From: Haliotis rufescens
Taxonomy: Eukaryota
NCBI RefSeq assembly: GCF_023055435.1
Contig: NW_025964112.1
Span: 20,026,001 to 20,090,000, forward strand
Length of the DNA stretch: 64,000 nt
Reading direction: 5' to 3'
The notes under the pieces are model-generated. The model did not search any database, had not been told where the DNA came from, and saw only the letters and a list, made by a program, of their open reading frames with translations. The stretch's first letter is position 1. Each line of letters starts with the position of its first letter. Of this stretch, positions 18,601 through 44,900 are shown one piece after another. The position numbers and the translations under genes were made by a program.

Positions 18601-21600
18601 AACACAACTCCAAACATTTACAGGTACTGTTTGAAATAAACACACTTGATATTCTAACAATAGTCTCATTCATTTTCACTTTTCCAAATTTCAGGTTGGT
18701 GTAATTACAAAAGAGAAACCAAAATGTATATACGACAATGATTATCCATAGAACTAGTTCAATATAGTCTCATATTTTAACGCAAATGGATAACTCCTAT
18801 AAACAGAAACAATTATTCTTTCAGTGCCACCAAAGCTTCCAATTGATACGCCACGTCTGCTCACCATGGGCCCAGAGTCGGTGCGCATGTCCTGGATGCC
18901 GGCAAGAATCCCAGTGTATGCCAAGTCTACACCCATCACCTACACCATCGAGGTCAAGGACACTCCATCTGGGTCATGGAGGGATCTGATCGGTGGAATA
19001 AGTGACATGAGTCACGAGATTGGTGACCTGAAACCTTCTCAAGACTACCACTTCCGTGTGAGGGCAGAGAATGAGTATGGTGTCAGTGAACCTACCTTCC
19101 ATGCTGTGCTGTCAAGAGCGAAAGGTAGCATAGTATTCTTTATTGGTTAATCCTGTGTGAATAGGCACTTGAGGAATGTGTGACTGTTTGCATGTGGATT
19201 GCTGCTCATGCTATCAACCATTGGTTTATCTGAATAGTGTGAGCATAATCTGTTTTATGGTGACTATTGAACGGGTGGTCAGGCTCGCTGACTTGATTGA
19301 TGCATATCATCGTATCTCAATTGCTGGATTCTCTGGTCCAGACTCGTTTAACAATCAAACAAACAAACAAACAAACAAACAGTACAACAAGGACCCCAGC
19401 AACCTGTACTTGTCGTAGGAGTCTGCTAAATGGTGTGGGTGGTCAGACTCATTGACATGGTTCTTTGCATATCATTTGCCAAAAGCATGGATCGATGCTT
19501 GTGATATCAATCTGGTCCAGACTTGATTATATACAGCCCACCATCATACAGCTGAGAGTGGCACTACAAGCATGGTGTACTCTGGACCTTATCTATCTTG
19601 GAATCCCTATGGGGTACAAACATTGGTAAGAGAGTATTTAATGTGCAAGTGGATAAGATATATATAACTATTCATTATCTAGCTTCTGCCCTTACATTAA
19701 GGGACTTTTTTTTCTAAATTGTTTTGAATACCTCATTGCTAAAATGCATTTTAGGTTTCTAAAAATTATGAACACAAAGTGAGCTTACCATCAGGATGTT
19801 TAAAGCTAAAGCTCCTGTTATATTGTGTGATTATCATATAGCAGTTGAAAGTTTGGATTTGATGTTTTGATCATTTCAGCTGCTGAGAAGAGACGCCCAT
19901 CCATTGAGCGTTCTGACGATGGAATACTGTCATCAAAGACACCATCCTACATCGACAGTCTCATGTCTGGAGGTATGCCTTGAACCCTTGCATATTCATG
20001 TACAACAACTTCCATGCCTAAACCCTTGTTTACCCTCAATACGAAAGAAATGTATGAAGTCAATTGAATAATGTTAATAAGTACTCTGCTTTGAAATTTT
20101 TATCTTGAAGATCTCAAAATGGGATACTTGTCAGGAATATTTTCTATCATGGCCTCCATGCACTGAAGGCTAATGGGCTCTGACAGAAGATCGAGTGACT
20201 GTAGTTTAATTATATTAATGGTCAAGAGTAAGCAAATGAAAAATGTCCATGTGACCATGTAACCATGTGACTGACGTTTGACTTTCAGTGCCTCCAAGAA
20301 CACCTACTGGTCGCCCAACCATCAATAGCCAGACAGAGGATCGTCTTGTCTTGAACTGGCAACCTGCAAGAATGCCATCCTACCTGCGCCAGACGAAGGT
20401 CAGCTATATTGTAGAGCAGCGGGAACCGCCAAATCATTTATGGTCTGTCATTGCTGAAGATGTCCCAGAAACATCCTACAAAGTGCGTGACCTTGACCCT
20501 GAACAGGACTACATGTTCCGAGTGAGAGGTCAGAATGAGTTCGGTACCAGTGACCCCACGCTTCCAACATCTCTAACAAGAGAAAGAGGTAGGTGACTTA
20601 ACTCTGACTTAATTGTCAATCTAGCTGTCAATAGAATCAAATTCAAGATTAAATATGTTCAGGGAAACATTTACAATTTATCATATGGCATCACATATAA
20701 TGAGTGGTAATATTGGTTACTCAGGTAGGAAATATGGGATGTTCTATCTAATCACATACAGTTAAGCCTTGTTAAGCCTTGTTAACTCAAATGCGATCAT
20801 TTGACATATCATTCATGATGAAGTAATTTTATGGTTCTGGTAGAACCTGTATTATGATCATTCTGTTTGCGTCAAAATATTGAACATTCAATGATGCAAA
20901 ATCTTTCTTGACTCAGAAAATGAATGTTTCCTGTTGTAGTGAAGCTAACTTATTACACTATGATAGTGACCTGGGCTTCTGTGAATGCCTCTAAATGGAT
21001 GTACTTCTTCCCACAGAGGACCCCAATGCTCGGGAATACCGTGGACGCTCCAGCTCCAGGGCTCGCAGTGTCAGTCCGTCAGCTCACCGCAGATTGTCCC
21101 TCACACAGAAAGATGACGATCCTTTCTCTGAAGGAATCCGTGAGTGTAGAATCAATTTGATAGGATCAAAAGAATCATGGCCATTTTGCCCAGTCTTAGA
21201 AGACTAGCTATATCATGTGTACAAGAGTCTTTCATATATTTTAGAGGATAGAAACTGTTCAAGATTATGACTGTTTTCATTTTCTTGTGATTCATAATGA
21301 TAAAAATGAATTCATAAAGCTCCTGAATTCCATCATAAAGATGATCAATGGCCCTTGATTAATTCACAAATGTCACAGTTGTTAATTTGCATCTATTTAC
21401 ATCTTCAGTTTTGTCATATTTTCAAAACCAGAATGAATATTAAATCAGGCACTGCTTAATGTATCAGTATCAAATTAATCGTAACCATTTAAATATTTTT
21501 CCAGCCATTGCTCCTGATTTCGTTCTGCCCAAAGAGAACAAGCAGTATGGGGTGGAAGGTGGAACAGCCAAGATCATCCTACAGTTACGTGGTAACCCCC

Positions 21601-24600
21601 TCCCTGTCATCATGTGGTACTTCAATGATGAGAAGATCATCTATGGTGACCGCTACAATACTTACATTTCCCCCAGTGGTCAGGTTGTCCTGGAGTTCAC
21701 AGACATGGGCTGGCCTGATGTTGGACATTACAAATGCGTGGCCGAGAATGACCATGGAATAGCTGAGAAGACCACACATCTTGAGATGGCAGGTAAGAGA
21801 TGATATTAACAATATTTTGCTGTGTAACTGTTCTAAACATAGCTTATTTGCAGCTACCACTGGTACATTGGAGAAAGGCTTGACACAACTTCCAACTGTT
21901 TGCTCTATGGATTGTGCTGTAACATCAATATAGAGCCAGCATAGAGAAGCTAATTGCTTTTTCAATATTTAAACAAGATGACGTCACCGACTTCAACTTT
22001 TTGACTGTTTGTCAGCAAATTTTCAAAATATATTTTCCTTATGATCCTAGCTAGAACTTCTATATCATATTAATAATGTAAAAGGACTTTAATCTTAAAA
22101 AACTTTGGAAATCTGTTCAGATTTAGGGATCACAAGGAAAACGTATGAAATGATCCAAATGATGAAATAAATAGAGCACAGATTCTACATGCACCTTACA
22201 TTCCAGATCCTCCGACCATCATGGTGGCCCTGAAGGACACGACCTTGGTGGAAAGAGGCAGTGGCCAACTTCTATGTCGTATTGATGGTTATCCCACCCC
22301 ATCAGTTAAGTGGAGCAAGGACTGGCGCCCTCTGTCAGAGACATCCAGAATCTATGTGTCGAACCAGAAACCAGACACCTGGACGATGAACATCAACAAT
22401 GTCATGTCAATGGATGAAGGCCAGTACATGGTGGTGGCTGAGAATGTTGCTGGGAAGGTGCACTGCTCTGCCAGGCTCACTGTGGAAGGTAGCTGCATAT
22501 CAGAATTGTTGATTTGGTGTACGTTTTTTTGTAAATGAGTTAATGCCAGATTTAAAAGCATTTTATCATTACTTGTCCTACAAAAAAACCCTATCTAATT
22601 GGGTTTTCCTAATCGGCTGGTCGACATGACATTATATAGATATGACACTGTATAGACATGACATTGTAGTGTTTTATGTGGACACAATTTCTTCATAAGA
22701 AACAGGCACTTGATCTAATACTTTACTGGACCCATGAGGATCAGGGGTAGAATAAGTCTTCAGCAACCCATGCGGCGTAAGAGGCAACTAACATCATCGG
22801 GACCTTGTACTGATAATTTGTTGCATGTGTCCAGAGGTAATGGGGTTTGCAAGCAGAATGTACCTGCTCATCCTTACACATTTAGATCATTATCCATAAT
22901 CCGCTCCAAATGTCATTTCCTTGCGCAATCATTCCCACTATCGACAGTTAGAAGTTTCCACATTTAAATGCAACAAACCACTTGGTATTTTGGCACAACT
23001 GTCAATATTTTCATGGTCAATCCAGTTGTTACATCCCTCCCCTTGAACGCCGTCTTGTATTACTATTCTGCTCCTCCTAAACCCTACAATCCCTTATGTG
23101 ATTTGTTATCAAATATTTGGTATCCTGAAGACAAGCAGAGGACATATTCTCTAAGAAATGGTCATAATTTGAGGATTCCTTTTCACAGATGTCATGCCAA
23201 CCAAAGGTACCACAGATTTCAAAGACACTTCCAGCATCGAGGATGGTTACTACGTCTTGGAAGAACTTGGCAGGTAAGACATTCATTGAAGTATGTGGTC
23301 TGAGGCTAAGTTGACTGATGGGAATCAAGGACAGATGCAGGAATTGTAAAAGTGGGAAAGGGGCAAATTAATAATTTGGCAATGTATATATATATGTTTA
23401 TTTATAGAAATGTTTTTTTAAAGGATAATCCCCATATGTGAATCTGCCTGTAGGATTGCTTGTATATTAAACAGTTTACTCTAACACTAACTTTGATGAT
23501 ACAATGTAGTAATACAATTATAGCTCTTGACATTTTTTTTTTGGATTTCACTGGTATGGTACCAACTGATTAATCTCACATTCCAGGGGTCGTCATGGTG
23601 TTGTGCACCGAGTCATTGAGAAATCAACCGGCAACGTATATGCTGCCAAGTTTGTGCGAGTACGCGATGACACAGAGAAGGATTTCTTCAGGCCAGAACT
23701 TGAAACATCACGGATGGTAGACCACAAAAACCTCCTGTCACTTCATGATGCATATGAAACACCCAAGAAACTCATCATGGTCAACGAACTGTATCCTCAA
23801 CAAAGAACATTCATTAAAGTTCACATTTTATCTTCACCTAACTTAAAATGGGTTTCAGTGTCCCGGTTGCACATTTCATAAAACTGTTATGTTTTCACAT
23901 TGACCTTGGCTAAATAATACCTTGAAAAGTGTGTTTTTTTGTATGAAATACCCTGGATGAGATAATCTTGACACTCCCCACTCTTTTTAGTAGAGTGAGT
24001 GAGTTCACCTTATTGATGAAGCCCTTGAAGGAGGGGAACGGTGCTTATAGACAAAGGATTATGATTCGGGAGATTTTGACTATGGAACTTAATTGTGGAT
24101 AACTTTCAACATTCATTGATGTATGTCAAAAGCAAAATAGTCCTGTTTTCCACAACGATCACAATTCTTTTCAACCTAAGAAGAAAGTATTCAAAGAATT
24201 AATCAATTTCTTGTTTTCATATGAACATACAAGTTGCTTAATCTGCTAACATAGTAGTTAAACATAAAAGCAGTTGTGGAACTTAACCACTGCCAGATTG
24301 ACCGGTGGCTCGCTTCTAGACCGCATCATCAAATCTGGAAGTCTGACTGAGAATAGTGCTGCCTTCTATGTGAGGAAGCTACTGGGAGGCCTGAATGAGC
24401 TTCACAAGATGAACATTGTACATATGGACATCAAGGTGAGGAAGAGGCTAGTCCAACACTGGACTGGATTTCATGTCCTTGACTTCTGTGGCTCATATTG
24501 TTGAGTATTTTATAACATAAGTATCTGGGATTCAAAGCCATGATCAATAGTTTCTGGCATACTCTGCCCAGAGAATTGAAACATTTTAAAACAAAGGTAT

Positions 24601-27600
24601 GTGAATGGGAGACAACCTATAGTAGAACTTCTCTCAACTCTCATCTGAGCTATTGTACCCTGATGGTGTGGATCATAGAAAAGAAAATGTAATTCTTTTG
24701 AAATATCATGCATGTTAACCTAATAACTTTGTGTGCAGCCAAACAACCTGATGTTCCCAAGTCCTGAATCTGATGAGCTCCGGTTGATTGATTTTGGCTT
24801 TGCAAAGAAACTTCCTCACACCAAGGATGTTCTGTTCAACTTTGGTACGCCTGAGCACGCGTCCCCAGAGCAGATTGACCATGAGCCCGTCACTCTAGCC
24901 AGTGACATGTGGTCAGTCGGTGTCCTCACTTACATACTGTGAGTAGCTTCAGTGTTCCTTCATCATATAGTAACAATACAATACACTATATCATTGAAAC
25001 TTAAATATGATATCACATAGAAACATCAAGGCATTTTGTAAGTAATTATATATTTTCACTTCAGTGGAGATAGGAAAGAGGATTTTGTTATTGCTGAGAT
25101 ATAAATGTGGAGAATGTGGGTTAGAATTAGTCCCGAGTAACCTCTGCTTCTTGAAAGAGGTGACTTAAGAAAATGGATTGGGTGCTCCATCATATCCCAA
25201 TGAGTTTGCCCATAATATCAACCCATGGTATGTCTAGACCATGCTCAGTTATTAACAGGTTGCCATGATATAGTGGAAATATTGCTGTACAAATAAATAT
25301 ATAAATAGATCTTGTTGAAATGAAAATCATTTGAGAAGATTGAAAAAATGAGATTCTCTCTTGGCTGATGTCAATGGCTCAGCAACATTTGGAATATGCA
25401 AGATAAAAAGTGATGGATTTTAGATTTGTTCTAACATGAAAATGGACTGCAAAAACAGGTGATGAAGTAATCAAATATAGTAATCCAATCCTGATAGGAA
25501 AATGCCTGCTACCAAAAGTTAGACAGGGATTTGGACAAATAAATAATCTATTTTTTGGTTCTGAGAGATATCGTTTAAAATTAATACCCACCATTTTGCA
25601 GGCTGAGTGGTGTGTCTCCTTTCCATGACAACACTATTCGAGATTCCCTCATCAAGACTGTGGACTGTGACTGGCAATTTGACACCGCCTTCAACAAAGT
25701 CTCTGCCGATGCGAAGGACTTCATCTCCAAACTCCTTGTCCTTGACCCAATGTAAGTGAAGTGAATCCACATGCAGTTTAAGTTTCTTTAGTACATAGTT
25801 CTGATGTGGTTATTCATTACAGCCTCATGTGAACTGAGGTCTCCTGTGCTCATTAATGCCCAACAAAAATGGGGATTGGTTGGTGACAATGGCTGCAATA
25901 TTTCTTGAAAGGATAACCGTCAAGAGGACCAACTCTTATTGACCTGAATGTCATCGTATCTTGATGGCATATTGCTCATTCTGTCATTCCTTTGTTTTGA
26001 TATATAACAATGAGCTTGCTGACAAAATGTCATGGTTAGTTAACTATGGAGAAACTGTTGACACACATATTAACAAATATATATGCAAAACAATATTTCA
26101 TCAATTGGTAACACACTAAGACTTAATCTCTTGAGCTTCTTAAAATTGCATGGAGAGTTACATTTTTGTCTTACAAAACTTTATACAGCCATAGATATGT
26201 CAGTAAATGAATGATGAACCTGATGGATACAGCTGATGATGGAGCCCTGTAGTGTTAACATGGTTTGAATATCCTAATATTATTTCCAGGGACCGCTTGA
26301 CAGTTGAGGAGTGTTTAGAACACTCTTGGCTGAAGAACACCACAGACCGAAATGGAGGTGCTAAGATTGATGTGGGCAAACTCAAGACTTACCAAACTCA
26401 GGCACGCCAGGTAAGCAAGTGTGAGGTAAAAGTGAAAGATTGAAAAGTTTTCAGATGAACTGAGACATGTTTGCAAGGAATCTGGGCAAACAAGACCTTC
26501 ACAAAGCCAATAGGTTAGATCGTTATCTCACATGAGTTTTGTCCCGAGAATTGTCCGGACTCACTTTTCAATGTGTACATTGTTTTCTTGTCCCCAGACT
26601 GGTGAGCCTTCTATGCGGACTGTGGCTGACCTGTACAGTCTGAGCAAGTTGTTAGAGGGCACTCCCCGCCATGGAGGTCTACACCCAGAGGTCGACTCGG
26701 CCACAAGCAAGATCACTTTCCCAGGGTCCGAGGCATATGGAGAGTTTCTTGATGATGAGTCTTGGTAAGGGAATCACACTGACATTCTTTGACTGCAATT
26801 TAATAAATATGAAAGAACCCATTTGATAGATTTCTTTCCATTACATGTGGTAATAGAGCTTATCAATGTTTTCATTGATATGTATTGCTGGTTGTAATTT
26901 CTTGATATACATTGGATTGATACATATTTTCATTTGGGGAAATTTGGAACATCAACCTTTCGTTCTTTTGTTCATTGTGGTGTTTTTGGTTTCCTAGTTG
27001 AGGAAATATCACTTATTGGGTTCATGAAAAATGAATAAAAGGTATTAATTATTGCCAATGCTTGAAAAAATAAGGGTTAGAGTAACTATATCCAGTGTCA
27101 CAATGAAGACAAGATTACACTTTATCATATGCAAATGTCAGAGAAATTCCTGGCACGAAACATTGCATATTGGAGCAGTTATCAAAACAAAACAATCACC
27201 CACAAAGTCATCCTATCGATCCCATGCTAGGTATGACTGGCAGATGCGCTACCAGCCTGGCCATGAATCAGAGCTCTACCCAACCAAGGACACTGATTAC
27301 TCTCTGCGAGTGCGTGGCTACCGGCGCCAAGCTGGTGAGCCCGATGACAGCTTTGACCTTGAAGATGAAGTTTATGGGGATGACGATTACTCTGTAAAGG
27401 CACCTACTGTCCGAGAGCGCCGTCTGTTGTCTGATGTGGACAAGGAAACCCTGCCGCCTTCCCTGGAAAAGGAAATGGCATGGATGGCGGAGATGAGAGA
27501 GAAGAGACCAAAAGATACTGATGAGATGAGCATTGCTTCCAAGCGATCATCCCTGGGATCTGTTTCAACGGAAGGTACTTGAAACTCTTATAGCAGGCTC

Positions 27601-30969: not shown

Positions 30970-33900
30970 AATAAGATTTTTCATTTCTTATTCAAGTTAA
31001 CTTTCACAAGGAAAAATGTTTTCTATAAAAAATCCAGGGGGCAGTTGCTGGCTGGCTACGGCACTGGTGGGGGGTAGTTTGTTTTGTTGGAGTTACATTG
31101 GTGCAGTGATCAAGAAAGGGATCTGTTGGGATTTAAATAATAAATACTTCCTTCTCCTCCTTGACAGGTGCACCTGCTATCACCTCTGATCCTGAATATG
31201 ACCTACGGTTATTGCGACAGCGTCAGACTGTGGCACCGGAACCACCAGCAAGTCGATGGGAAGTCAGTGAAGTGGAAGAGGTTGAGACTGAAGCTGACCT
31301 GAAGAAGACCAAACCAGAAGATGTGTACAACCTCGGAGACACACTCTGGAAGTCAGTATTTGATATACTAGCATTTATTGATGTATCCTCTGAGATATAA
31401 CTTTGCTCACCTGGACTGACAGTCTAATCTGATTTTTCATATGGCTGTCATAAAGAAAAGGCTTTATGATCTATAGTAGGGCTGTACATAGAAGTAATGT
31501 GGTGGTTGCAACTTTTACCAATCCTTCATGAAAGTTTCAAAATAGAAAGAAGAGTAACTTTTTTCAGGCATGTGTAGGTCTACTTCCAAAAACAGGATGT
31601 GCTGCTATTTACTCTATATGATTCTTGGGTGAGTGAGTGAATTTGGTTTTACGCCGCATTGAACAGTATTCCAGTAATATCATGGTGTGCAAGATTGATA
31701 TGGGGGTGGGGGGGGGGGGGAGCCCCAAATGATGCAGGTCTTAGACGTCTACCACTCTGGTGAAACCCTCAAGCACGTGTATGGTGCTGATAGACCTAAA
31801 ATCAATCAGGCCAATAAGGATTCAAAACCATGAACATAGGTTTCTGGTGTGTCCAAGGGAAGCAACTCTAGACAGGGAATTGCAGCTCCTTAGATGACTG
31901 GGCCACCCGTGCTTCGGGTGATTCTTGAATCAATCCTGTACCCCAGTACAGGATTCTGAAAATTAAAAGGGAAAAAAATACATCAAACAATAAAGAAATA
32001 ACATGTACTCATGACTTGAGAACAAATAATGATTTCGGTTGGAACATCAGCATTTCATGCTCTTGCTGTTCACAGGGGCAAGTTCTCACAGTACATAAGC
32101 TGCAATAATGCTGCGACAGAAAAGGATCATATAATGCGAGTGGTACCTCTAACAAAGGACAATGAAAGTGACAGGTTGCGTGAGTTTAACATTCTTAAAG
32201 GCATCCAACACAACCACGTTGGACAACTTTTGGAAGGATTCCAAACAAGCACAGACTTTTACATGGTGTTGGAGAGAATGACAGGGGACAATATTGCTCG
32301 TTACCTCGGCTACAAACGTAGATACAGTGAGGATGCTGTTGTGTGTGTTTTACGGCAAGTGATTGATGCCTTACAATTTTTGCATCGCCATGGTTATGCA
32401 CATCTGAATCTTCAACCTGGTAGCATCATCATGGCCAACAGACAGAGTCTCAATATCAAGCTAGTTGATTTCAGTCTAGCAAGGAAGATCTCACCAGAGG
32501 GAGATACTGTGCCAAGGATGGGCTACCCTGATTTCATGCGTAAGTAACTGAGTCTGATTATTTTTAGATGATGTAGGGTAAGATCTCAAATAATTGTATT
32601 GTAGGTAATGAGAATTGGAGTTTTTCTTTCCAAGTTATAAGTAGCTACCTGGGCAACAGAAATCCTTTTCTCTTAAGACAGGTAATAATGTGAGTTATTA
32701 TAAATGTTTCTTTAGCTTTGATGTTATCTTTCTTGTTGCAGATCAATTTAGTTTACAAGATCAATTTGAATTCTTATTTTTTTTATGGTTTTCTGTCTTA
32801 ACTAAAGAAAGAATTTGTAGATTTCTGACTCCATAAATCTTCATTTGGGACAGTCTATTAAAACAAGTAGTCATGCATCATCAAGGGAAGTGAGACTTCT
32901 GACCTCTCCCTATTTCACCTTCAGCTCCTGAGGTTGTTGTCGGAGAGCGTGTGGGCTGCTGTGCCGACCTGTGGGGACTGGGTGTCCTAGCCTTCCTGCT
33001 GTGAGTACACACTGGTTGCCCCAGCAGGGGCACAACACATCAGGAGTAATGTTGCATTAAATATATATAGACATTCCAACAATATCACCTGGAGTGAGTG
33101 AGTTGGGTTTAACAACACTTTGAACAGTATTCCAGTTATATCCGCCTCATGTCTGCTTGATGTGGTAGGAAAGCCCAATAACTTCTTGTGAAGAAAGCAT
33201 TACTCTCTCATGTTTATTTTTCATCAAATTTCTGTAAATAATTATGAAGGCGAAAATATGATTGGTACTAAAAATATTGTCTATGTAGTCAGGTATTGTC
33301 ACTGTTAATCTCTAGTTGTTGAAGGGTTTGTAAAGAAGAAAACACCTATTTCATATTTGCTTTTCAGCAAGAATGATTTTACAGAATCACATTCTTGGTT
33401 AGCTTATGTCACATGACTGATTAATGTACAGACTGGTGAAGGAATTACTAGTGAATATTGTCAAGAACAAGGCATACTATTTTTTATAAAACACGATTCC
33501 TCATATCATGTCCATAAATACATAGTTCTTGATGGGTTGGTATCATAAAGTGTCATTTTACTGAGAGGCACACACAAACTAAACTTTCTGATTACCTTGT
33601 GTTTCAGGCTTAGTGGGGAGTCTCCCTTCTCTGCCAACACAGATGATGAGACGCTTGCCAATATTGCATACAACAGATATAATGCTAATGACATGTATGA
33701 AAACGTCTCAAAGGAGGGACTAAAGTTTATCTTCAAACTCCTCAAGCGTATCCCAAGGTGAGTCACATGCACAGGCACATGCACAGGCACAAACACATGC
33801 ACAGGCACAGGCACACTCACAGGCACATGCACACTCACAGGCACATGCACACTCACAGGCACATACACAGGCACACTCAGAGGCACACGCACAGGCACAG

Positions 33901-35019
33901 GCACACACACAGGCACATTCACTCACAGGCACACACACAGGCAAACGCACAGGCACATGCACAGACACACTCACAGGCACACTAACAGGTACACTCACAG
34001 GCACATGCACACTCACAGGCACACACACACGCACAGGCACACTCACAGGCACACTCACAGGCACACGCACATTTACATGGACCAGTTGTTTATTACAGGG
34101 GGTAGAGGCTCAGAGGTTTTTGATGCACTGATGTACTGAAAATAATTACCCTCCCCTAATATCTTGAGATGATCATCTTTGTACATGTTTTTCATGCAAA
34201 AGGCCTTAATATTTTATTATAAAATGGCCATTTTTTCATGACCCTCCTTAAATATGTGAATGATTTTTTAAGACCCTCCCCTTGTGACTGTCATATATTT
34301 GGTGACCCTACACTGATTCTCACCCCCATCTCATTTATAATAATGGATCAGTTCCTTGGGATAAAGAATGTGATGGATGGTAATCAGGTTTGTAGTGTCA
34401 TCAGAAGAACTTTCAAATGAGTCTACAACTGTCTCAATCTGCTTTTACACTTATCAGAAAGTAACCAATGAGCTACAAGGAACGATGAATTAACTGCCCT
34501 GTATGCATGGATGTTGCCAGTCCTAGTCTTTGTGAACCAGCAGATCTGTTATGTTTCAGGAACCGTCCAAGTCTGGCTGACTGCCTGGACATGAAGTGGA
34601 TGCTGCAGACAGATGCCATCATCAAGTCACGGAGTGAAACTTGGTTCCCAACAAACAAGATCCGCACTTTTGCTGATGAATATGACAAACGAAGAGTGGC
34701 TGACAGCTTCAGACTAGATTACACAAAGCTTGAGCTGACGACCAAAAAACCTGTAGAAAGCAAGCGTGTGCGCAAAGAGAGAAAACCTGCAGCTGAAGCT
34801 GAACCTCAAGCTGATCAGTCGGTAACTGAGAGCACAAAGAAATTTGCCCCTAAGGTTATAAAGGAATTGGAGGCTGAACCTGAAAGTGAGGCTGGTGCAG
34901 GTGAAAGTGAGGCTGTTAAGCCTGAGACAACAGAAGAGAAGATAGAACAAGTTGCTGATGATGTTGTGTCCAAAGCTCTTGATGAGGCCATGCAATCTTC
35001 TGAGTTAACCAGTGCATGA
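325..35019 (+). CDS. unc-89: UNC-89/obscurin-like giant muscle protein, 3' part (29 exons, ~2,125 aa; 7 Fn3-2 Ig-kinase-linker-Ig-Fn3-pseudokinase-tail); 5' end outside window
   Basis: All 29 exons have AG/GT boundaries with matching phases, totalling 6380 nt (2 nt + 2126 codons including TGA at 35017-35019). The kinase-linker-Ig-Fn3-kinase order and the linker motifs (GEFLDDESWYDW...LRVRGY...VRERR) fit the UNC-89/obscurin/SPEG family. Confidence 0.88.
1061..1357 (+). CDS. unc-89-like exon: Fn3 domain 2
   Basis: ccttccag|...CCTG|gtaagt, phase 1-1; VSWRP...YRLE...W...YQVTGLRPRQDYAFRVRA. Confidence 0.92.
2370..5410. repeat. Intronic satellite array, 79-81 bp monomer, with higher-order structure
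   Basis: Repeats of tagaacaaggtgttttgtatgtaggcttatgagggtgtgaagtgtgtcagctaataatttagggtgtgatgtatctgggca; 27-aa periodicity in minus-strand ORFs. Confidence 0.95.
4619..4750 (-). mobile_element. tRNA-derived SINE (family A), 5'-truncated, inserted into the satellite
   Basis: B-box GGTTCGATTCC, (CACT)n tail, 13-bp TSD tatgagggcatga (4606-4618 / 4751-4763); near-identical to 56362-56517. Confidence 0.9.
7313..9380. mobile_element. Non-autonomous Kolobok-like DNA transposon
   Basis: ~75-bp terminal inverted repeats AGGGGCACGGATCTAAAGCAATTCCC... / ...GGGAATTGCTTTAGATCAGTGCCCCT flanked by TTAA; AG...CT termini; no transposase. Confidence 0.75.
10711..11389. mobile_element. Degenerate Tc1/pogo-type MITE
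   Basis: TA-CAGTAAACT...ATAATGAA start, repeated ATAACGAA motifs, degenerate complementary end ttcattatgaccgaagttta...tgta. Confidence 0.4.
14819..15121 (+). CDS. unc-89-like exon: Fn3 domain 3
   Basis: tttccag|...CCAG|gtcagc, phase 1-1; LRWQ...W...LTGLQPRQDYYFRIRGE. Confidence 0.92.
15504..15806 (+). CDS. unc-89-like exon: Fn3 domain 4
   Basis: gttcag|...ACTA|gtaagt, phase 1-1; LRWSN...YVIEM...W...YKLTDLSPRKDYMFRIRA. Confidence 0.9.
16136..16234 (+). CDS. unc-89-like 99-nt spacer exon (RLSYEPLVAPESLINQEDFTLTNRPYIESLTVK)
   Basis: ttctccag|...AAAG|gtaagt, open frame, phase 1-1; not in the ORF track. Confidence 0.8.
16538..16715 (-). mobile_element. SINE family B, truncated copy
   Basis: Similar to the adjacent full copy; gtgagtgagt tail. 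Confidence 0.75.
16792..17074 (-). mobile_element. Full-length tRNA-derived SINE (family B, tRNA-Leu/Ser-like head)
   Basis: A-box TGGCCCAGTCGTCTAAGGC, B-box GGTTCGAATCCC, (CACT)n tail, 11-bp TSD tgctgcaatat. Confidence 0.9.
17421..17723 (+). CDS. unc-89-like exon: Fn3 domain 5
   Basis: cttgcag|...ATAG|gtatgc, phase 1-1; LSWHP...YRVEM...W...DYAFRVRAVNDFGYSEP. Confidence 0.93.
18410..18478 (+). CDS. unc-89-like 69-nt acidic spacer exon (EHRLLGDEDDDEAFDFGKPMSET)
   Basis: ttgtttcag|...ACTG|gtgagt, open frame, phase 1-1. Confidence 0.8.
18825..19124 (+). CDS. unc-89-like exon: Fn3 domain 6
   Basis: ctttcag|...AAAG|gtagca, phase 1-1; MSWMP...YTIE...W...DYHFRVRAENEYGVSEP. Confidence 0.93.
19255..19570 (+). 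mobile_element. Two degenerate copies of another SINE-like family (core gggtggtcaggctcgctgacttg...ctggtccagact)
   Basis: Same core recurs at ~25110-25290 and 60210-60500; (AAAC)n tail. Confidence 0.6.
19880..19972 (+). CDS. unc-89-like 93-nt spacer exon (AAEKRRPSIERSDDGILSSKTPSYIDSLMSG)
   Basis: catttcag|...GGAG|gtatgc, open frame, phase 1-1; contains RRPS. Confidence 0.82.
20289..20588 (+). CDS. unc-89-like exon: Fn3 domain 7
   Basis: ctttcag|...AGAG|gtaggt, phase 1-1; LNWQP...YIVE...W...DYMFRVRGQNEFGTSDP. Confidence 0.93.
21017..21139 (+). CDS. unc-89-like 123-nt Ser/Arg-rich spacer exon (…RGRSSSRARSVSPSAHRRLSLTQK…)
   Basis: cccacag|...ATCC|gtgagt, phase 1-1; contains RRLS. Confidence 0.85.
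21505..21792 (+). CDS. unc-89-like exon: I-set Ig domain
   Basis: APDF...GNPLPVIMWY...DVGHYKCVAENDHG; phase 1-1 splice sites. Confidence 0.93.
22207..22488 (+). CDS. unc-89-like exon: I-set Ig domain
   Basis: LLCRIDGYPTPSVKWSK...DEGQYMVVAENVAG; phase 1-1 splice sites. Confidence 0.93.
23189..23273 (+). CDS. unc-89-like exon: start of kinase 1 (…YYVLEELGR)
   Basis: tttcacag|...GGCAG|gtaaga, phase 1-2. Confidence 0.87.
23587..23790 (+). CDS. unc-89-like exon: kinase 1 subdomains I-V (GRGRHG, YAAKF)
   Basis: ttccag| acceptor; ends GAACT|gtatcctc (U12-type donor); phase 2-2. Confidence 0.9.
23791..24296 (+). other. U12-type (minor spliceosome) GT-AG intron
   Basis: Donor GTATCCTC (consensus RTATCCTT). 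Branch-like ACTTAAC at 24281-24287 (consensus CCTTAAC) ends 9 nt before the 3' splice site. No polypyrimidine tract. Splicing restores NEL-LTGGSL. Confidence 0.85.
24297..24435 (+). CDS. unc-89-like exon: kinase 1 (LTGGSLLD...HMDIK)
   Basis: phase 2-0; catalytic-loop HMDIK|gtgagg. Confidence 0.92.
24739..24938 (+). CDS. unc-89-like exon: kinase 1 (PNN...DFG...GTPEHASPE...SDMWSVG)
   Basis: phase 0-2; subdomains VIb-IX. Confidence 0.93.
25602..25751 (+). CDS. unc-89-like exon: kinase 1 (LSGVSPF...AKDFISKLLVLDP)
   Basis: ttttgcag|...CCAAT|gtaagt, 150 nt, phase 2-2; read directly, not in the ORF track. Confidence 0.92.
26290..26410 (+). CDS. unc-89-like exon: end of kinase 1 (RLTVEECLEHSWL)
   Basis: phase 2-0; subdomain XI. 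Confidence 0.9.
26598..26764 (+). CDS. unc-89-like exon: interkinase linker
   Basis: ccccag|...CTTG|gtaagg, phase 0-2. Confidence 0.85.
27231..27574 (+). CDS. unc-89-like exon: interkinase linker (YDWQMRY...VRERR...KRSS)
   Basis: gctag|G...GAAG|gtactt, phase 2-1. Confidence 0.85.
28462..28749 (+). CDS. unc-89-like exon: interkinase Ig domain
   Basis: PTFKAKLED...WYRN...DTGIYKCVARNKYG; phase 1-1. Confidence 0.93.
29487..29598. mobile_element. Small foldback/MITE
   Basis: Perfect 15-bp inverted repeat gttgtagcaggatca / tgatcctgctacaac. Confidence 0.55.
29712..29843 (+). CDS. unc-89-like exon: Fn3 N-half
   Basis: PPERPGHP...IWTSAKTNGNSDILYYRLDY; phase 1-1. Confidence 0.9.
30572..30733 (+). 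CDS. unc-89-like exon: Fn3 C-half
   Basis: W...GLMPDTPYRFRVCGVNEFGPSPYS; phase 1-1. Confidence 0.9.
30901..31066. mobile_element. Short MITE with internal poly-G (G32, 30936-30967)
   Basis: Termini caaggccgtag / ctacggcactg. Confidence 0.45.
31168..31351 (+). CDS. unc-89-like exon: linker into kinase 2 (…PEDVYNLGDTLWK)
   Basis: ccttgacag|...TGGAA|gtcagt, phase 1-2. Confidence 0.87.
31628..31918 (-). mobile_element. SINE family B
   Basis: Homologous to 16792-17074; 9-bp TSD tgattcttg. Confidence 0.8.
32076..32539 (+). CDS. unc-89-like exon: kinase 2 (pseudokinase) subdomains I-VIII
   Basis: GKFSQY...HIMRVV...HLNLQPGS...DFS...GYPDFM; phase 2-1. Confidence 0.92.
32925..33000 (+). CDS. unc-89-like exon: kinase 2 (PPEVV...ADLWGLGVLAFL)
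   Basis: ccttcag|...TGCT|gtgagt, phase 1-2. Confidence 0.9.
33608..33757 (+). CDS. unc-89-like exon: kinase 2 (LSGESPF...LKFIFKLLKRIP)
   Basis: gtttcag|...CCAAG|gtgagt, 150 nt, phase 2-2. Confidence 0.92.
33762..34070. repeat. CA-rich minisatellite (ACAGGCAC-based units)
   Basis: Tandem acaggcacatgc / acaggcacactc starting just after a splice donor. Confidence 0.92.
34560..35019 (+). CDS. unc-89-like last coding exon: end of kinase 2 plus acidic tail with AKAP-like helix
   Basis: tttcag|G AAC CGT...; NRPSLADCLDMKWM...; TGA at 35017-35019. Confidence 0.9.
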
Positions 35020-36498
35020 TGTGCACACCTTGTAAGTGGTTTTAAAAAACAAAATACAATTGTACAGGATAAACAAATATATTTTTCTTAAAATGATCAA
35101 TGATTTGTTTTTGTAATTTGCTCTGTGATTTGTGTTGAAATTACACTCCAATTTGTTTGTACACACACAAACATGCTTTAAGAAAAGGAATTCTGAAATA
35201 GATCTGTCACTGTAAAGTATTGGAAAGTTATTTAATGGTGTGTGGTGAATACAAATTAATGCAGTTCATCTGCTACTTTATACTCTGTAAGAAATTCATT
35301 ATGAAGGTTTATCTAATCTTATATTTATTTCAGATAGGATTTCTTACCAAGGAATGATGGAATGAAAGAACAGCGGTGACTTGTTGAGATGTGTATTTTC
35401 GAAAATACGTGAAGACTTCTATATATTTCTACCTATGTGATAACCAGTTGCCCTTCATCTAGATATTCCCGTTTGCCTGCAGTAACCTCAGTCAAACATT
35501 CTGTACACTGAATCAGATTAAATCATCACTTATTTAACAATTCCAGAGTGTTCAACTTTAAAAGTCATAATATAGAGAAACTGGCTACTTCCCTGTTATA
35601 TATGGAATATAATGGTTCTATTTGATTCAGTTCAGTGAATGTTAAACTGGGAGACAAAAGTGTTTCTCTTTATTCAAGGTTAGTGAGTGACCTTGACCTA
35701 CTTTGTGTGGTGCTCCTACTCAGATGTGTGAGGGATTGTGAAATGTGTAATTTTTGGTACAACATTGCATCACACCTAGAAGTTGTGTACATTTTTGAAT
35801 ATTTATTTTTGAAAGGGTCAGTTGCAATCTTCAGATTCTGAAGTGAATTTGAGTCTGAAAATGTGATATTTTAACCTGTTTGCATTTGAATGCATTTTAT
35901 GATGCTTGACTAAGTCATCTATGTACTTATGACACATTATATGTGATTAGTTTGATTCCTCTGTGCTTTCTGGAATGCTTAGTGATTGGTGAACATATCA
36001 ATCATTGTGTAAGTCATACCAAAGAAGTGATATTATTGCGAAACTATTTTTTACCCTTTAACCCAAAATGAATGTTGTAAGCGTAATTGGTATATATTTG
36101 TGCATATTTTTCTATGTAAAAAAGAATACAGATGCACACTTGCATCAACCTTTTGTCATCACAAACTAAATACCAGAGGATAAATGGATATCTTTTGGAA
36201 GAAAAAAATAGTTTTCTATATTCACAGTATATGAAAAGGAGATTTGGGTGGTCCAATGTGTTATTCATTTATTTAAAAAATGTTTACATTGTAGATGTCT
36301 TTATATTTTGTATTCATTGATGGACAAAGATAGCAGTTTGTGAACAACCACTGAGTATTCAGAAATAACAGATGAATCCTAATGTGCAATATCGATGTTA
36401 TACTTTATCATATTACAAGAATTACATGCAAGTTTTCTGCAAAGGTTTACATATGTGTATTTATTTTATCAATGGATGTAAACAGCTCCTTGCATTAA

Positions 36499-36635
36499 CA
36501 TAGGTGGATCCAGAGTGGTGTGTGTGTCCAGGCCCCACCTTTTGAATGTGGTATGTTGTAGGCAGTAAAATTGTTGGAGGGAGGATTTTCATATTTTGGA
36601 CACCTCCAATTTTAAAAATGCCGGATCCGTCCTTG
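36499..36635. mobile_element. Short MITE in the 3'UTR
   Basis: Termini cataggtggatccag / ccggatccgtccttg; 6-bp flanking duplication cattaa. Confidence 0.55.
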
Positions 36636-37311
36636 CATTAAGTTAATTTGATTTGAGACAAGACCAGGGCTATGTTGTGTGATGTTGAGATAAGTACTAA
36701 GAGCTGGCAACTGCAATATGTAGATCTCATAGGACTCAGGGTGCAGTGCCTGTGCCCAAATTTGTGTACAGTAGTCAGGAATACATGATGGGAGGTTGTG
36801 GTATGGTTTTTGTGTGACATGTACAGCCAGATTAACAGTTTGTTTGCATTGTTTTCAGAATATTTATTTGAAAATACTGAGCTCAATCTATGACAACATG
36901 TTTTTGACTTGGCTCATTCAATATCACAGATTTCACAACATTTGGCATTCAGGGGAGATTACTGCTTGGAAGGGAGATAACTGGAGAGGTTATTTTTCTG
37001 ATCCATTGCTTGTATTTTTCAATCATTTCTTCTGAGTTGTTTCTTTCTTTTTTTGTAATGGTAGATACTGAATTTGGATATTTAGTTTTTTTTGTAAAAG
37101 TGTAATTATTCAAGTACATTTGCTTTGCATGTATTACTTTGAATGAACAATGTAATGACCATATGTTGAAGGATTTTGTGATTGAAATGTTTACCAACCA
37201 ATCTGTGATCACATTACTGCATTTATTGTGTGAAATACCCTTTCTTCGTGTAGACTATTTACCCTTTGGGTGTCAGGAAGGGCAACTGTGAACTCCTCAC
37301 TATATAGCTGA

Positions 37312-41602: not shown

Positions 41603-41929
41603 ATGGGTTCCTTCTACGTTATAAGCATTGCGGTCATTTGTATGAATTGTGTTTCTCCGGTATCCGTGAGGAAAATGTGTTCAAAGGTAGACGATCTGTC
41701 ACAACTGCGGCAAAACCAGCGACTTCCTGGAAAAGAATTATTTTCAACCATGACAGATGGAGTCATGTTATGTGCACGCTTATGCCTTGGTGTTACGCTG
41801 TGTGGTTCTTTCAACTTCAACACCAGAACTGGTGCTTGTGAACTCAATGACGTCACTCTTGGGACAGAAGGAACCGAAGTAGTCCATGCACCCAATTACG
41901 TTTTCTCCGAAGTCAACTTTTGGCCAAAG
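41603..41929 (+). CDS. PAN-GON exon 1: signal peptide + PAN/Apple domain
   Basis: MGSFYVISIAVICM...; CARLC...CGSFNF...CELN; AAG|gtaatc. Confidence 0.85.
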
Positions 41930-44900
41930 GTAATCTTCAAAACCCATGTCTTTCATTAGTTTCCCCGTGTAGTTCTTGGGGCGAAACATGTCCCTGGTAC
42001 CCATGCTTGTCGATACAGGCCGCAGAGATATAGGTGAAATGTTGTGGGATGTTGTAGAATGTTGCGGACTCGCGCGATACAGGCTGCAGAGATATTGGTG
42101 TAATGTTGTAGAATGTTGCGGACAACCACGATACGGGCCGTAAAGATATAGGTGGAATGTAGTGGGATGTTGTGGAATGTTGCGGCCTGGCGCGATACGG
42201 GCCGCAGAAATAATGGTGTAATGTTGTGGGATGTTGTAGAATGTTGCAGACTGGCACAATACAGGCTGCAGAGATATTGCTGTAATGTTGTGGAATGTTG
42301 TAGAATGTTGAAGAATGTTGCGGACAACCGCGATACGGGCCGCAGAAATATAGGTGGAATATTGTGGGATGTTGTAGAATGTTACGGGTTGGTGCGATGC
42401 AGGCTGCACACATATTGGTGAAATGTTGTAGAATGTTGCGGAAAACCGCAATACAGGCCGTAGAGATATAGCTGGAATGTTGTGGGATGTTGTAGAATGT
42501 TGCGGACAACCGCGATACAGGCTGCAGAGATATTGCTGTAAGGTTGTGGAATGTTGCGGCCTGGCACGATACGAGCCGCAGAAATATAGGTGGAATGTTC
42601 TGGGATGTTGTAGAATGTTGCGAACTGGCGCGATACAGGCTGCAGAGATATAGGTGGAATGTTGTGGAATGTTGCAGATTGGTGCGATACAGGCTGTAAA
42701 GATATGGTTGGAATGTTGTGGGATGTTGTAGAATGTTGCGTACTGGCGCGATACAGGCTGCAGAGATATTGGTGTAATGTTGTGGAATGTTGCGGACAAC
42801 CGCGATACGGGCCGTAGAGATATGGTTGGAATGTTGTGGGATGTTGTAGAATGTTGCGAACTGGCGCGATACAGGCTGCAGAGATATAGGTGGAATGTTG
42901 TGGAATGCTGCAGATTGGTGTGATACAGGCTGTAGAGATATGGTTGGAATGTTGTTGAATGTTGTAGAATGTTGCGTACTGGCGCGATACAGGCTGCAGA
43001 GATATTGGTGTAATGTTGTGGAATGTTGCGGACAACCGCGATACAGGCTGCAGAGATATTGGTGTAATGTTGTAGAGTGTTGCGGACAACCGTGATACAG
43101 GCTGCAGAGATATTGGTGTAATGTTGTAGAGTGTTGCGGACAACCGTGATACAGGCTGCAGAGATATTGGTGTAACGTTGTAGAGTGTTGCGGACAACCG
43201 CGATACAGGCTGCAGATATATTGGTGTAATGTTGTAGAGTGTTGCGGACAACCGTGATACAGGCTGCAGAGATATTGGTGTAATGTTGTGGAATGTTGCG
43301 GACAACCGCGATACAGGCTGCAGAGATATTGATGTAATGTTGTAGAGTGTTGCGGACAACCGCGATACAGGCTGCAGAGATATTGGTGTAATGTTATAGA
43401 ATGTTGCGGACAACCGCGATACAGGCTGCAGAGATATTGGTGTAATGTTGTAGAATGTTGCGGACAACCGCGATACGGGCCGTAGAGATATGGTTGGAAT
43501 GTTGTGGAATGTTGTAGAATGTTGCGTACAGAGATATTGGTGTAATGCTGTGGAATGTTGCGGACAACCGCGATACAGGCTGCAGAGATGTTGGTGTAAT
43601 GTTGTAGAATGTTGCGGACAACCGCGATACGGACCGTAGAGATATGGTTGGAATGTTGTGGGATGTTGCGTACAGAGATATTGGTGTAATGCTGTGGAAT
43701 GTTGCGGACAACCGCGATACAGGCTGCAGAGATGTTGGTGTAATGTTGTAGAATGTTGCGGACAACCGCGATACGGACCGTAGAGATATGGTTGGAATGT
43801 TGTGGGATGTTGCGTACAGAGATATTGGTGTAATGCTGTGGAATGTTGCGGACAACCGCGATACAGGCTGCAGAGATGTTGGTGTAATGTTGTAGAATGT
43901 TGCGGACAACCGCGATACGGGCCGTAGAGATATGGTTGGAATGTTGTGGGATGTTGTAGAATGTTGCGGACTGGCGCGATACAGGCTGCAGAGATATAGG
44001 CGGAATATTGAGGACTGGCGCAATACAGTCCGCAGAGATATAGGTTGAATGTTGTTGAATATTGAGGCCTGGCGCAATATTGGCCGCAGAGATATAGGTG
44101 TAATGTTGTGTCATGTTGTGTAATGTTGTGTAATGTTGTGGACAAAGCGATACAGGCCGTAGGGATATAGTTGGAATGTTGCGTATTGCCGCAGAGATAC
44201 AGGTGGAATGTTGTTGAATGTTGTTGAATGTTGCGGACTGGCGCGATGCAGACCTCGGGAATGTAGTTTGAATGTTGAGGACAGCTGTGATCTTCCCGAG
44301 GCAAGAGTGTCCACATGCCTATATCAAAGCCTACTTTCCACCCTTGCCATTTCAAACCTACTTTTCTGATCTAAAATATGAAAGGACTATCGCACATATC
44401 GACAGCCCCATCAGAGAACGTTCTCCAAAATCAACATCTGGGTTCCGAAAACGTGGTCGTTGCCATCGCCTGTCGAATTGTTCCAAAAACTAAGTGAAGT
44501 CAAATATTTCGGAGTGGTTCAAAGTTTTTAATCAACCCGCCAAAGTACTATCTATACATATATAGTTCATTGTTGTTTTTTTTTTATCTCGAACGACTGA
44601 ACGCTTATAGCGGTGAGGTGAGGTGAGGTGAGGTGAGGTGAGGTGAGGTGAGGTGAGGTGAGGTGAGGTGAGGTGTTTAACGTCGCGTTCAAGATTATTA
44701 TACAGGGACGTGCATGTGTGGGGCTGCTTGTACTTGTCCGGACAAATGCTAGCCCACTGAGATATCATGCCGCACTCAGACACAGCATCCAAGCCGACCG
44801 GTCCTTGTTTTAGCCCGATAATGCCGACCACCAGGCAGGTTAACAACAAGTTTTTAACGTTTCGTTGTATGTCGCAACCTCCCGCTCTCCGGGAAGACGA

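What the first reader, a model, noticed from the sequence alone, without database searches (positions are those of the whole stretch)
34939..34989. Candidate AKAP (PKA RII-binding) helix at the C-terminus of the UNC-89/obscurin-like protein: a possible built-in PKA anchor plus substrate system
Seen: after kinase 2 the protein ends in a disordered E/A/K/P-rich tail containing KIEQVADDVVSKALDEA. Established: RII-binding AKAP helices follow phi-x-x-phi-phi-x-x-phi-phi-x-x-phi-phi (e.g. AKAP-IS QIEYLAKQIVDNAIQQA). This peptide aligns without gaps (I-xx-VA-xx-VV-xx-AL). The same chain carries PKA-consensus sites RRPS (19891-19902), RRLS (21088-21099) and KRSS (27541-27552) in linkers. Inference: the protein may tether PKA to the thick-filament/M-line and be phosphorylated in cis. 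Molluscan catch-muscle relaxation is PKA-dependent through twitchin, so a filament-bound AKAP would be relevant. I am not aware of obscurin/UNC-89 being described as an AKAP.
Basis: partly seen in the sequence, partly recalled or inferred. Interest (0 to 1): 0.8.

Follow-up and report, generated by a model that had tools for sequence, protein, structure and literature searches.

The report
Conserved AKAP-like helix ending mollusc obscurin
The giant muscle protein obscurin/UNC-89 of an abalone ends in a short helix that looks just like the docking site for protein kinase A and is also kept in scallop and oyster, so it is probably functional, but no binding to the kinase has been tested.

Summary
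Observation confirmed. KIEQVADDVVSKALDEA is encoded at 34939-34989 (+), nine residues before the stop codon. Spliced RNA contigs from four runs confirm this exon and stop. The gene is the UNC-89/obscurin orthologue of an abalone (Haliotis), not of a bivalve.

The peptide is not a chance match.
- It is the only stretch with aliphatic or aromatic residues at all eight AKAP hydrophobic-face positions (2, 5, 6, 9, 10, 13, 14, 17) in the 5,867-aa H. asinina orthologue.
- It is the top scorer of 194,533 17-mers against three published RII-binding helices (87; background maximum 58).
- AlphaFold2 predicts an isolated helix after a disordered linker.
- The helix recurs ungapped at the C-terminus of scallop obscurin. 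A shortened form ends oyster obscurin. The surrounding tails are otherwise unalignable.

The abalone genome encodes PKA RI and RII subunits, and the RII docking domain is close to mammalian RIIα.

Against: Pfam finds no AKAP family. Limpet, chiton, octopus, mussel and non-mollusc gene models lack the helix. Binding is untested.

Verdict: a conserved C-terminal linear motif (about 0.9). It is most likely a PKA R-subunit docking helix (about 0.45). That would make it a new candidate member of the AKAP class. I found no paper describing obscurin or UNC-89 as an AKAP.

The parts
34939..34989 (+). 17-residue AKAP-like core KIEQVADDVVSKALDEA. Hydrophobic-face positions are I2, V5, A6, V9, V10, A13, L14, A17.
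34936..34998 (+). Predicted isolated alpha-helix (last-exon residues 126-146, EKIEQVADDVVSKALDEAMQS). This block does not vary among three Haliotis species.
   Evidence: AF2, (helix 126-146, pLDDT about 60); 0 of 23 variable columns, against 14 of 66 in the linker.
34699..34935 (+). Disordered, fast-evolving E/A/K/P-rich linker between the kinase regulatory tail and the terminal helix.
   Evidence: AF2 pLDDT below 50. Not alignable with scallop or oyster except at the helix.
34560..34698 (+). End of the kinase-2 domain plus a conserved regulatory-tail segment of about 45 aa (two predicted helices).
   Evidence: Conserved across molluscs. AF2 helices 5-24 and 32-46. Splice acceptor at 34559/34560.
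35017..35019 (+). Stop codon TGA, 12 nt upstream of a 3'UTR splice donor.
35032..35333 (+). 3'UTR intron (GT..AG, 302 nt). It is retained in low-depth contigs.
   Evidence: tables 5 and 8.
35334..36900 (+). 3'UTR exon. It continues beyond the stretch that was laid.
   Evidence: table 8.
32076..33757 (+). Kinase-2 coding exons 32076-32539, 32925-33000 and 33608-33757, spliced to the last coding exon.
   Evidence: joints. Pfam Pkinase 3.9e-24.
27541..27552 (+). KRSS(L) basophilic (PKA-type) site in the interkinase linker. It is conserved in Haliotis, Arion and Lottia.
21088..21099 (+). RRLS(L) basophilic site in the Ser/Arg-rich linker before the Ig pair. It reads RRMSL in H. asinina.
19891..19902 (+). 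RRPS(I) basophilic site in an inter-Fn3 linker. It is conserved in H. asinina and in Patella.

Best explanation
The last 20 or so residues of abalone UNC-89/obscurin form a short, acidic, proline-free amphipathic helix. A disordered linker of about 80 residues tethers it to kinase domain 2. The helix is a conserved short linear motif. Its most likely job is to dock the dimerisation/docking (D/D) four-helix bundle of a PKA regulatory-subunit dimer. The subunit would be RII-type or dual-specificity, because the RI-specific aromatic-Ala start is absent. Obscurin would then act as an A-kinase anchoring protein that holds PKA at the thick-filament/M-line region. There PKA would sit near basophilic sites in obscurin's own linkers and near other sarcomeric substrates such as twitchin. 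Shown: the sequence, its transcription, its position at the C-terminus, helix propensity, rarity of the pattern, conservation across gastropod and bivalve orthologues, and presence of RI and RII docking domains in the same genome. Inferred: binding to the R subunit, sarcomeric PKA anchoring, and phosphorylation in cis.
For: (1) All eight hydrophobic-face positions given for AKAP helices (2, 5, 6, 9, 10, 13, 14, 17; PMC12083921) are small aliphatics. Net charge is -3 and there is no Pro or Gly. (2) The pattern is a single hit in the 5,867-aa H. asinina orthologue. In 196,833 aa of 140 related proteins the only other hits are one oomycete kinase and one read-through artefact. (3) Summed BLOSUM62 score against AKAP-is, Super-AKAP-is and Ht31 (sequences from PMC4526808) is 87. 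That is rank 1 of 194,533 17-mers, with a background maximum of 58. Oyster scores 60 and scallop 54, both in the top ten. (4) Conservation: the scallop (Ylistrum) tail ends GIKQLADDIVASAMDAALQ, matching ungapped at every face position. The tail alignment scores 94 against 47 +/- 7 in shuffles (0 of 2000). The oyster tail ends NNIANEAIDEAL, which keeps three hydrophobic pairs, and scores 66 against 41 +/- 6.5 (2 of 2000). Within Haliotis, 0 of 23 helix columns vary against 14 of 66 linker columns. (5) AF2 predicts helix 126-146 after a disordered linker. AF2 of oyster Ig-Fn3-PK2-tail gives no sign that the tail docks back on the kinase (pLDDT 32-34). (6) The genome G000 encodes an RI D/D exon, an RII D/D exon (IPVGLTDLLQEFTVAVLREKP, close to human RIIalpha) and two full-length RII open frames (E = 1e-104 to RIIalpha). 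(7) RNA contigs confirm the exon and the stop. (8) RRPS, RRLS and KRSS lie in the same chain.
Against: No binding data of any kind exist. Pfam gives no RII_binding_1 or other AKAP family on the tail, even at E <= 10. A peptide search of the PDB finds no AKAP peptide. The helix is absent from available models of Lottia, Patella, chiton, octopus, Mytilus, Sinanodonta, Solemya and heterobranchs, and from all non-mollusc orthologues. The oyster version lacks the N-terminal turn. AF2 confidence for the helix is only about 60. Amphipathic helices with this spacing can bind other partners. The reference set used for scoring is only three peptides, two of them near-identical. The basophilic sites are not enriched over chance and would also suit other kinases.
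Confidence: 0.45

Rival explanations
1. The helix is a conserved linear motif that binds a partner other than a PKA R subunit. Candidates are a sarcomeric or M-line protein, a phosphatase or adaptor of the kinase-2 region, or another RIIa/DPY-30-type four-helix-bundle protein.
For: Conservation shows function but not the partner. The genome also encodes SPA17/ropporin-like RIIa-domain proteins (L003, L004). PMC8339350 describes 18 D/D superfamily members that can take AKAP-type helices. Pfam sees no AKAP family. The residues shared by all three lineages (two hydrophobic residues, two spacers, then A-[LIM]-D-x-A-[ML]) are shorter than a full AKAP helix.
Against: The full eight-position register and the outlier similarity to high-affinity RII binders are more specific than a generic amphipathic helix. 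Non-PKA D/D proteins are mostly ciliary, flagellar or nuclear, whereas this transcript is an abundant muscle-type giant protein. No alternative partner is suggested by any result.
Confidence: 0.33
2. The helix acts within obscurin itself. Either it folds back on kinase 2 or its regulatory tail as an extra autoregulatory element, or it pairs with the same helix of a neighbouring molecule (an Ala-rich antiparallel helix pair) to dimerise obscurin at the M-line.
For: Titin-like kinases are regulated by their C-terminal tails. The helix is tethered about 80 residues after the conserved regulatory segment. Small Ala/Val faces permit tight helix-helix packing.
Against: AF2 of oyster Ig-Fn3-PK2-tail leaves the whole tail 556-632 unplaced, at pLDDT 32-34. 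The linker is long, disordered and variable in length: about 80 aa in abalone, about 110 in scallop and about 60 in oyster. An 18-residue acidic helix of low mean hydrophobicity is a weak self-associator.
Confidence: 0.12
3. It is a chance amphipathic stretch in a low-complexity acidic tail and has no specific function.
For: AKAP-type patterns are degenerate. The looser 12-residue pattern hits buried kinase helices one to six times per protein. Many orthologue models lack the helix.
Against: It is retained ungapped between a gastropod and a bivalve while the rest of the tail is unalignable (0 of 2000 shuffles). It does not vary among three abalone species where 21% of linker columns vary. The strict pattern is extremely rare.
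Confidence: 0.07

Closest known systems
Canonical RII-binding AKAP helices (AKAP-Lbc/Ht31 and the engineered AKAP-is and Super-AKAP-is)
   Same: 17-18-residue proline-free acidic amphipathic helix. Small aliphatic residues occupy positions 2, 5, 6, 9, 10, 13, 14 and 17. Six of 17 residues are identical to AKAP-is and seven of 17 to Super-AKAP-is, ungapped. It sits in a disordered region.
   Different: No binding has been shown. It is not detected by the Pfam RII_binding_1 profile. It lies at the extreme C-terminus of a giant sarcomeric kinase. The oyster orthologue keeps only three hydrophobic pairs.
AKAP-Lbc (AKAP13): a RhoGEF that is also an AKAP
   Same: One polypeptide would combine a DH-PH RhoGEF module with a PKA-anchoring helix and further kinase scaffolding. 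The full-length abalone orthologue has SH3-RhoGEF-PH.
   Different: There is no homology outside the DH-PH fold. In obscurin the helix is more than 4,000 residues from the GEF and follows two kinase domains. The analogy is functional, not a claim of family membership.
Sarcomeric and muscle AKAPs of vertebrates (synemin, myospryn, mAKAP, AKAP18 delta, troponin T, MYPT1)
   Same: The concept of PKA tethered to the contractile or SR apparatus next to its substrates. PMC5850968 and PMC3058960 mention synemin and troponin I as AKAPs.
   Different: None is an obscurin-family protein. None is known from molluscs. This would be a thick-filament/M-line giant-kinase AKAP.
UNC-89 (C. elegans) and obscurin (Drosophila, vertebrates)
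   Same: Orthologous architecture: SH3-DH-PH, Ig/Fn3 arrays, PK1, interkinase region, Ig-Fn3-PK2.
   Different: The nematode, arthropod, echinoderm, hemichordate and amphioxus orthologues retrieved here have no such terminal helix and no strict-pattern hit anywhere. They end in other lineage-specific motifs.

Membership tests
AKAP (functional class) | 14-18-residue amphipathic helix with hydrophobic residues at positions 2, 5, 6, 9, 10, 13, 14 and 17 (PMC12083921) | tested here: met
   I2, V5, A6, V9, V10, A13, L14, A17 (+M18). Scallop meets all eight positions. Oyster meets six of eight in a register shifted by four residues.
AKAP (functional class) | The segment can adopt a helix, has no helix breakers, and is accessible rather than buried in a fold | tested here: met
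   AF2 helix 126-146 flanked by a linker with pLDDT below 50. No Pro or Gly. The tail is not docked in the oyster PK2 construct.
AKAP (functional class) | Direct binding to the D/D domain dimer of PKA RI or RII, lost on proline substitution and competed by Ht31 or AKAP-is | not testable with these tools
   No multimer modelling and no wet assay were available. The partner domains do exist in the genome.
AKAP (functional class) | Targets PKA to a defined subcellular site in vivo | not testable with these tools
   This needs localisation or pull-down in molluscan muscle.
Pfam RII_binding_1 and other Pfam AKAP families | Match to the family profile | tested here: not met
   hmmscan of the last exon and of the 79-aa tail at E <= 10 lists only FdhE_C and DUF809, both far below their cut-offs. 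Caveat: the profile is very short, and HMMER's filters drop most weak matches.
RI-selective AKAPs | F/Y-A dipeptide at helix positions 1-2 (PMC12083921) | tested here: not met
   Positions 1-2 are K-I in abalone and G-I in scallop. The helix is therefore RII-type or dual, if it is an AKAP at all.
UNC-89/obscurin | Two C-terminal kinase domains separated by an interkinase region, with Ig-Fn3 before PK2 | tested here: met
   Pfam Pkinase on exons 23570- and 32020-. I-set on 22149- and 28344-. fn3 on 29684- and 30511-. Exons are joined in RNA.
UNC-89/obscurin | N-terminal SH3-DH-PH RhoGEF module in the giant isoform | tested here: met
   H. asinina orthologue P0142 (5,867 aa, same tail): RhoGEF 1.8e-29, PH 6e-26, SH3 1.5e-08. 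This part of the gene lies outside the window.

The most novel reading that the evidence does not exclude
In conchiferan molluscs, UNC-89/obscurin is a true sarcomeric AKAP. Its conserved C-terminal helix docks the PKA RII dimer at the M-line/thick filament, so one giant scaffold would combine a RhoGEF, two kinases and anchored PKA. That would give the long-known cAMP/PKA control of molluscan muscle (twitchin phosphorylation, release of catch) a filament-bound kinase source. It would also be an independent, mollusc-specific origin of an AKAP outside the vertebrate expansion.
Probability: 0.35. Interest if true: 0.72.

Novelty: new member of a known kind. Interest (0 to 1): 0.58.

Why it matters
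PKA relaxes molluscan catch and tonic muscle by phosphorylating thick-filament proteins such as twitchin (PMC12040844). How the kinase is positioned on the filament is not described. A conserved RII-type docking helix on obscurin would give a concrete, cheaply testable answer using a peptide, an RII overlay or a pull-down. It would add a giant sarcomeric kinase and RhoGEF to the AKAP class. It would also be an AKAP that arose outside vertebrates, where most AKAP diversification is placed (PMC12083921). Even if the partner is not PKA, the result defines a previously unannotated, anciently conserved C-terminal motif of molluscan obscurin.

Tried and rejected
- Pfam scan of the tail for RII_binding_1 and other AKAP families gave nothing.
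- phmmer of the 32-aa tail against the PDB gave only a designed four-helix bundle at E = 6.8.
- The representative search with the last exon gave eight hits, mostly fragments ending before the tail.
- The word search with the last exon found only the same sequence.
I could not read the Lottia, Patella or Mytilus genomic 3' ends to see whether their models are truncated.
- The protein-atlas search could not take the sequence.
- The supplement of PMC12083921, which has thousands of AKAP helices, is not held. I could not build a proper position-specific matrix and used three published peptides instead.
- The looser 12-residue AKAP pattern was rejected as evidence, because it hits buried kinase helices one to six times per protein.
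- Hydrophobic moment alone does not single out the helix. A linker segment scores equally.
- The intramolecular-docking rival was tested by AF2 on oyster Ig-Fn3-PK2-tail and got no support.
- Enrichment of PKA sites was rejected: four sites against about 1.6 expected.
The window was searched only with its last coding exon, and longer comparisons used database proteins.
Full report
**1. The observation**

- The + strand at 34939-34989 encodes KIEQVADDVVSKALDEA, in the frame of an open frame ending ...MQSSELTSA-TGA at 35017-35019.
- The window is eukaryotic (40% GC) and carries a multi-exon gene.
- Pfam on individual exons finds seven or more Fn3 domains, an Ig pair, kinase 1 (23570-), an interkinase exon (27049-27579), Ig (28344-), Fn3 (29684-, 30511-) and kinase 2 (32020-32544).
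The window was searched only with its last coding exon. Longer comparisons used database proteins.

**2. Is this the real C-terminus?**

- The look-up of sequencing runs found 20 holders of the stretch.
- I laid contigs of four runs from four studies and four organism labels. All were more than 95% alike.
- The contigs are spliced at GT..AG introns, so they are RNA-derived.
- They join 31165-31351 | 32076-32539 | 32925-33000 | 33608-33757 | 34560-35031 | 35334-36900+.
- The stop codon lies 12 nt upstream of the last junction, so the intron 35032-35333 is a 3'UTR intron.
The refutation condition "RNA-seq showing a different terminal exon" is not met.
- One run has G>A at 34957. This changes D to N at helix position 7, which is on the solvent face.

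**3. Which organism and which protein?**

- The last exon alone has few detectable relatives.
- Stepping through the Lottia partial protein and an alignment of orthologues retrieved "obscurin-like" proteins of many molluscs.
- H. rubra P0010 and H. asinina P0142 have tails nearly identical to the window's. The window therefore comes from an abalone.
- P0142 is 5,867 aa. It carries SH3-RhoGEF-PH, PEVK-like repeats, Ig and about 17 Fn3 domains, PK1, the interkinase region, Ig-Fn3-PK2 and this tail.
It is not from a catch-muscle bivalve.

**4. Is the AKAP resemblance more than chance?**

- PMC12083921 defines the AKAP helix as 14-18 residues with the hydrophobic face at positions 2, 5, 6, 9, 10, 13, 14 and 17. 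It gives an F/Y-A start as the RI determinant.
- The abalone helix has I, V, A, V, V, A, L, A at those positions, followed by M18. It has net charge -3, no Pro or Gly, and starts K-I. That makes it RII-type or dual.
- The commonly used 12-residue pattern is not informative here. It hits buried kinase helices one to six times per protein.
- The eight-position pattern is rare. It occurs once in the 5,867-aa protein.
- In 196,833 residues of 140 related giant kinases it hits this helix three times (P0001, P0010, P0026). The only other hits are one oomycete kinase and one read-through artefact.
- I scored every 17-mer of those proteins against three RII-binding peptides printed in PMC4526808. The abalone helix ranks first of 194,533, with 87 against a background maximum of 58. 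The oyster and scallop helices are also in the top ten.
- Against this, Pfam gives no AKAP family and a PDB peptide search finds nothing. Both tools are weak for 17-residue motifs.

**5.

Tails after the conserved 45-60-aa kinase regulatory segment are acidic, low-complexity and unalignable between classes. The exception is the very end:

| Species | C-terminal sequence |
|---|---|
| Abalone | ...EEKIEQVADDVVSKALDEAMQSSELTSA |
| Scallop, Ylistrum (P0026) | ...TEGIKQLADDIVASAMDAALQTPESNSGDATSDA |
| Oyster, Crassostrea (P0013, all RefSeq isoforms, and transcript-derived P0156) | ...EETSNNIANEAIDEALSSENVS |

- Scallop matches ungapped at every face position.
- Oyster keeps the three C-terminal hydrophobic pairs, which is still a two-hydrophobic, two-spacer core repeated three times.
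- Local alignment of the tails scores 94 against 47 +/- 7 for shuffles (0 of 2000) for scallop.
- For oyster it scores 66 against 41 +/- 6.5 (2 of 2000).
- Among three Haliotis species the helix block has 0 of 23 variable columns, against 14 of 66 in the linker.
- A motif retained since the gastropod-bivalve split, inside a tail that has otherwise diverged completely, is under selection.
- The helix is not seen in models from limpets, a chiton, octopus, Mytilus, Sinanodonta, Solemya and heterobranchs, nor in hemichordate, echinoderm, arthropod or nematode orthologues.
- Several of those models are partial. The Lottia model stops at ...TEEKPETS, exactly where the helix would start.

**6. Structure**

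- AF2 on the last exon gives two helices in the regulatory segment, a linker with pLDDT below 50 (residues 47-125) and an isolated helix at 126-146 with pLDDT about 60.
- This is the behaviour expected of a motif that folds on binding.
- AF2 on the oyster Ig-Fn3-PK2-tail construct folds the domains confidently (pTM 0.70). It leaves the tail 556-632 at pLDDT 32-34.
- There is therefore no support for the idea that the helix docks back on the kinase.

**7. Is the partner present?**

- The window's genome (1.33 Gb) has six RIIa-domain loci.
- One is an RI-type D/D exon.
- One is an RII-type D/D exon whose helix I (IPVGLTDLLQEFTVAVLREKP) is close to human RIIalpha in solved AKAP complexes.
- Two are intronless full-length RII open frames (E = 1e-104 to RIIalpha).
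- Two are SPA17/ropporin-like genes.
- A canonical docking groove is therefore available. Non-PKA D/D proteins also exist as conceivable alternative partners (PMC8339350).

**8. Substrate sites**

- RRPS, RRLS and KRSS are at the stated coordinates, in open frames.
- In H. asinina they are RRPSV 4404, RRMSL 4555 and KRSSL 5221.
- They are three of only four [RK]R-x-[ST]-hydrophobic sites in 5,867 aa. The fourth, RRTTA, follows the PH domain.
- RRPS is kept in Patella. KRSS is kept in Arion and Lottia.
- Four sites against roughly 1.6 expected is not an enrichment, and other basophilic kinases would fit. Cis-phosphorylation remains an inference.

**9. Literature**

- Full-text searches found no paper describing obscurin or UNC-89 as an AKAP.
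- They also found no description of a filament-bound PKA anchor in molluscan muscle.
- PKA phosphorylation of twitchin as the catch-release switch is established for bivalves (PMC12040844).

**10. Verdict**

- The helix is a real, transcribed, conserved C-terminal linear motif (about 0.9).
- The best-supported mechanism is docking of a PKA R-subunit dimer (about 0.45).
- The main rival is a different binding partner (about 0.33).
- Self-association or intramolecular use (about 0.12) and chance (about 0.07) are less likely.
- It is best classed as a new candidate member of a known kind, the AKAPs, in a protein family not previously linked to PKA anchoring. It is functionally reminiscent of AKAP-Lbc, a RhoGEF that also anchors PKA.
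- Binding assays or multimer modelling are the decisive missing steps.

Noticed in passing
window 35032-35333: A 302-nt GT..AG intron sits in the 3'UTR, only 12 nt after the stop codon. Low-depth contigs retain it (X1 record 4, X3 record 14). At that distance the junction should not trigger nonsense-mediated decay.
   Followed up: partly
G000 loci L005 (C605:28708587-28711679) and L006 (C1:69194069-69197161), versus L002 (C68): The abalone genome has two intronless, intact, full-length PKA RII open frames (385 and 394 aa, diverged from each other). It also has an RII gene whose D/D domain sits on a separate exon. The intronless copies look like old retrogenes that have stayed open.
   Followed up: partly
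window 21444-21800 and database proteins P0010, P0141: The H. rubra RefSeq model 'obscurin-like' (P0010) starts by reading the first Ig exon in the wrong frame; the window's frame-0 ORF 21493-21759 gives the same peptide. The neighbouring 'twitchin-like' model P0141 (660 aa) is really the upstream Fn3 part of the same obscurin gene. That annotation therefore splits the gene.
   Followed up: partly
window 31591-31787 and 32970-33166: Two intronic segments attract RNA contig depths of tens of thousands, with hundreds of partly fitting contigs and many loose ends. They are dispersed, highly expressed repeats (SINE-like) inside kinase-2 introns.
   Followed up: no
window 33720-34130: A long CA-rich compound microsatellite in the last coding intron gives open frames of HTHRH and PVSV repeats on both strands. 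It is not coding.
   Followed up: no
window 41780-44370 (minus strand): A large tandem minisatellite is open in all three minus-strand frames (repeats like HYTNISAACIAVVRNTLQ). It overlaps the region of another first-stage note about a PAN/Apple-GON protein.
   Followed up: no
window 46186-46953 (+) and 50365-51418 (-): Open frames that look like mariner/Tc1-type transposase remnants lie downstream of the obscurin gene. This reading is by eye from the translations; no family scan was run on them.
   Followed up: no
P0002 (Lottia gigantea partial protein), C-terminus: The Lottia model ends ...KPEPVDETEEKPETS. This aligns with abalone ...KPETTEEKIE, so it stops exactly where the helix begins. 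The limpet 'absence' may be a truncated model.
   Followed up: partly
Non-mollusc orthologues (P0044, P0006, P0028, P0033, P0034, P0035, P0039): Other phyla end their obscurin/SPEG-like proteins in different lineage-specific terminal motifs. Insects end ...SVQEELFTTF, hemichordates ...TMTIRRYCLVQQSFSFTTDDD..., and spiders ...LLNIFGKS.... The extreme C-terminus may be a general site of lineage-specific partner motifs.
   Followed up: no
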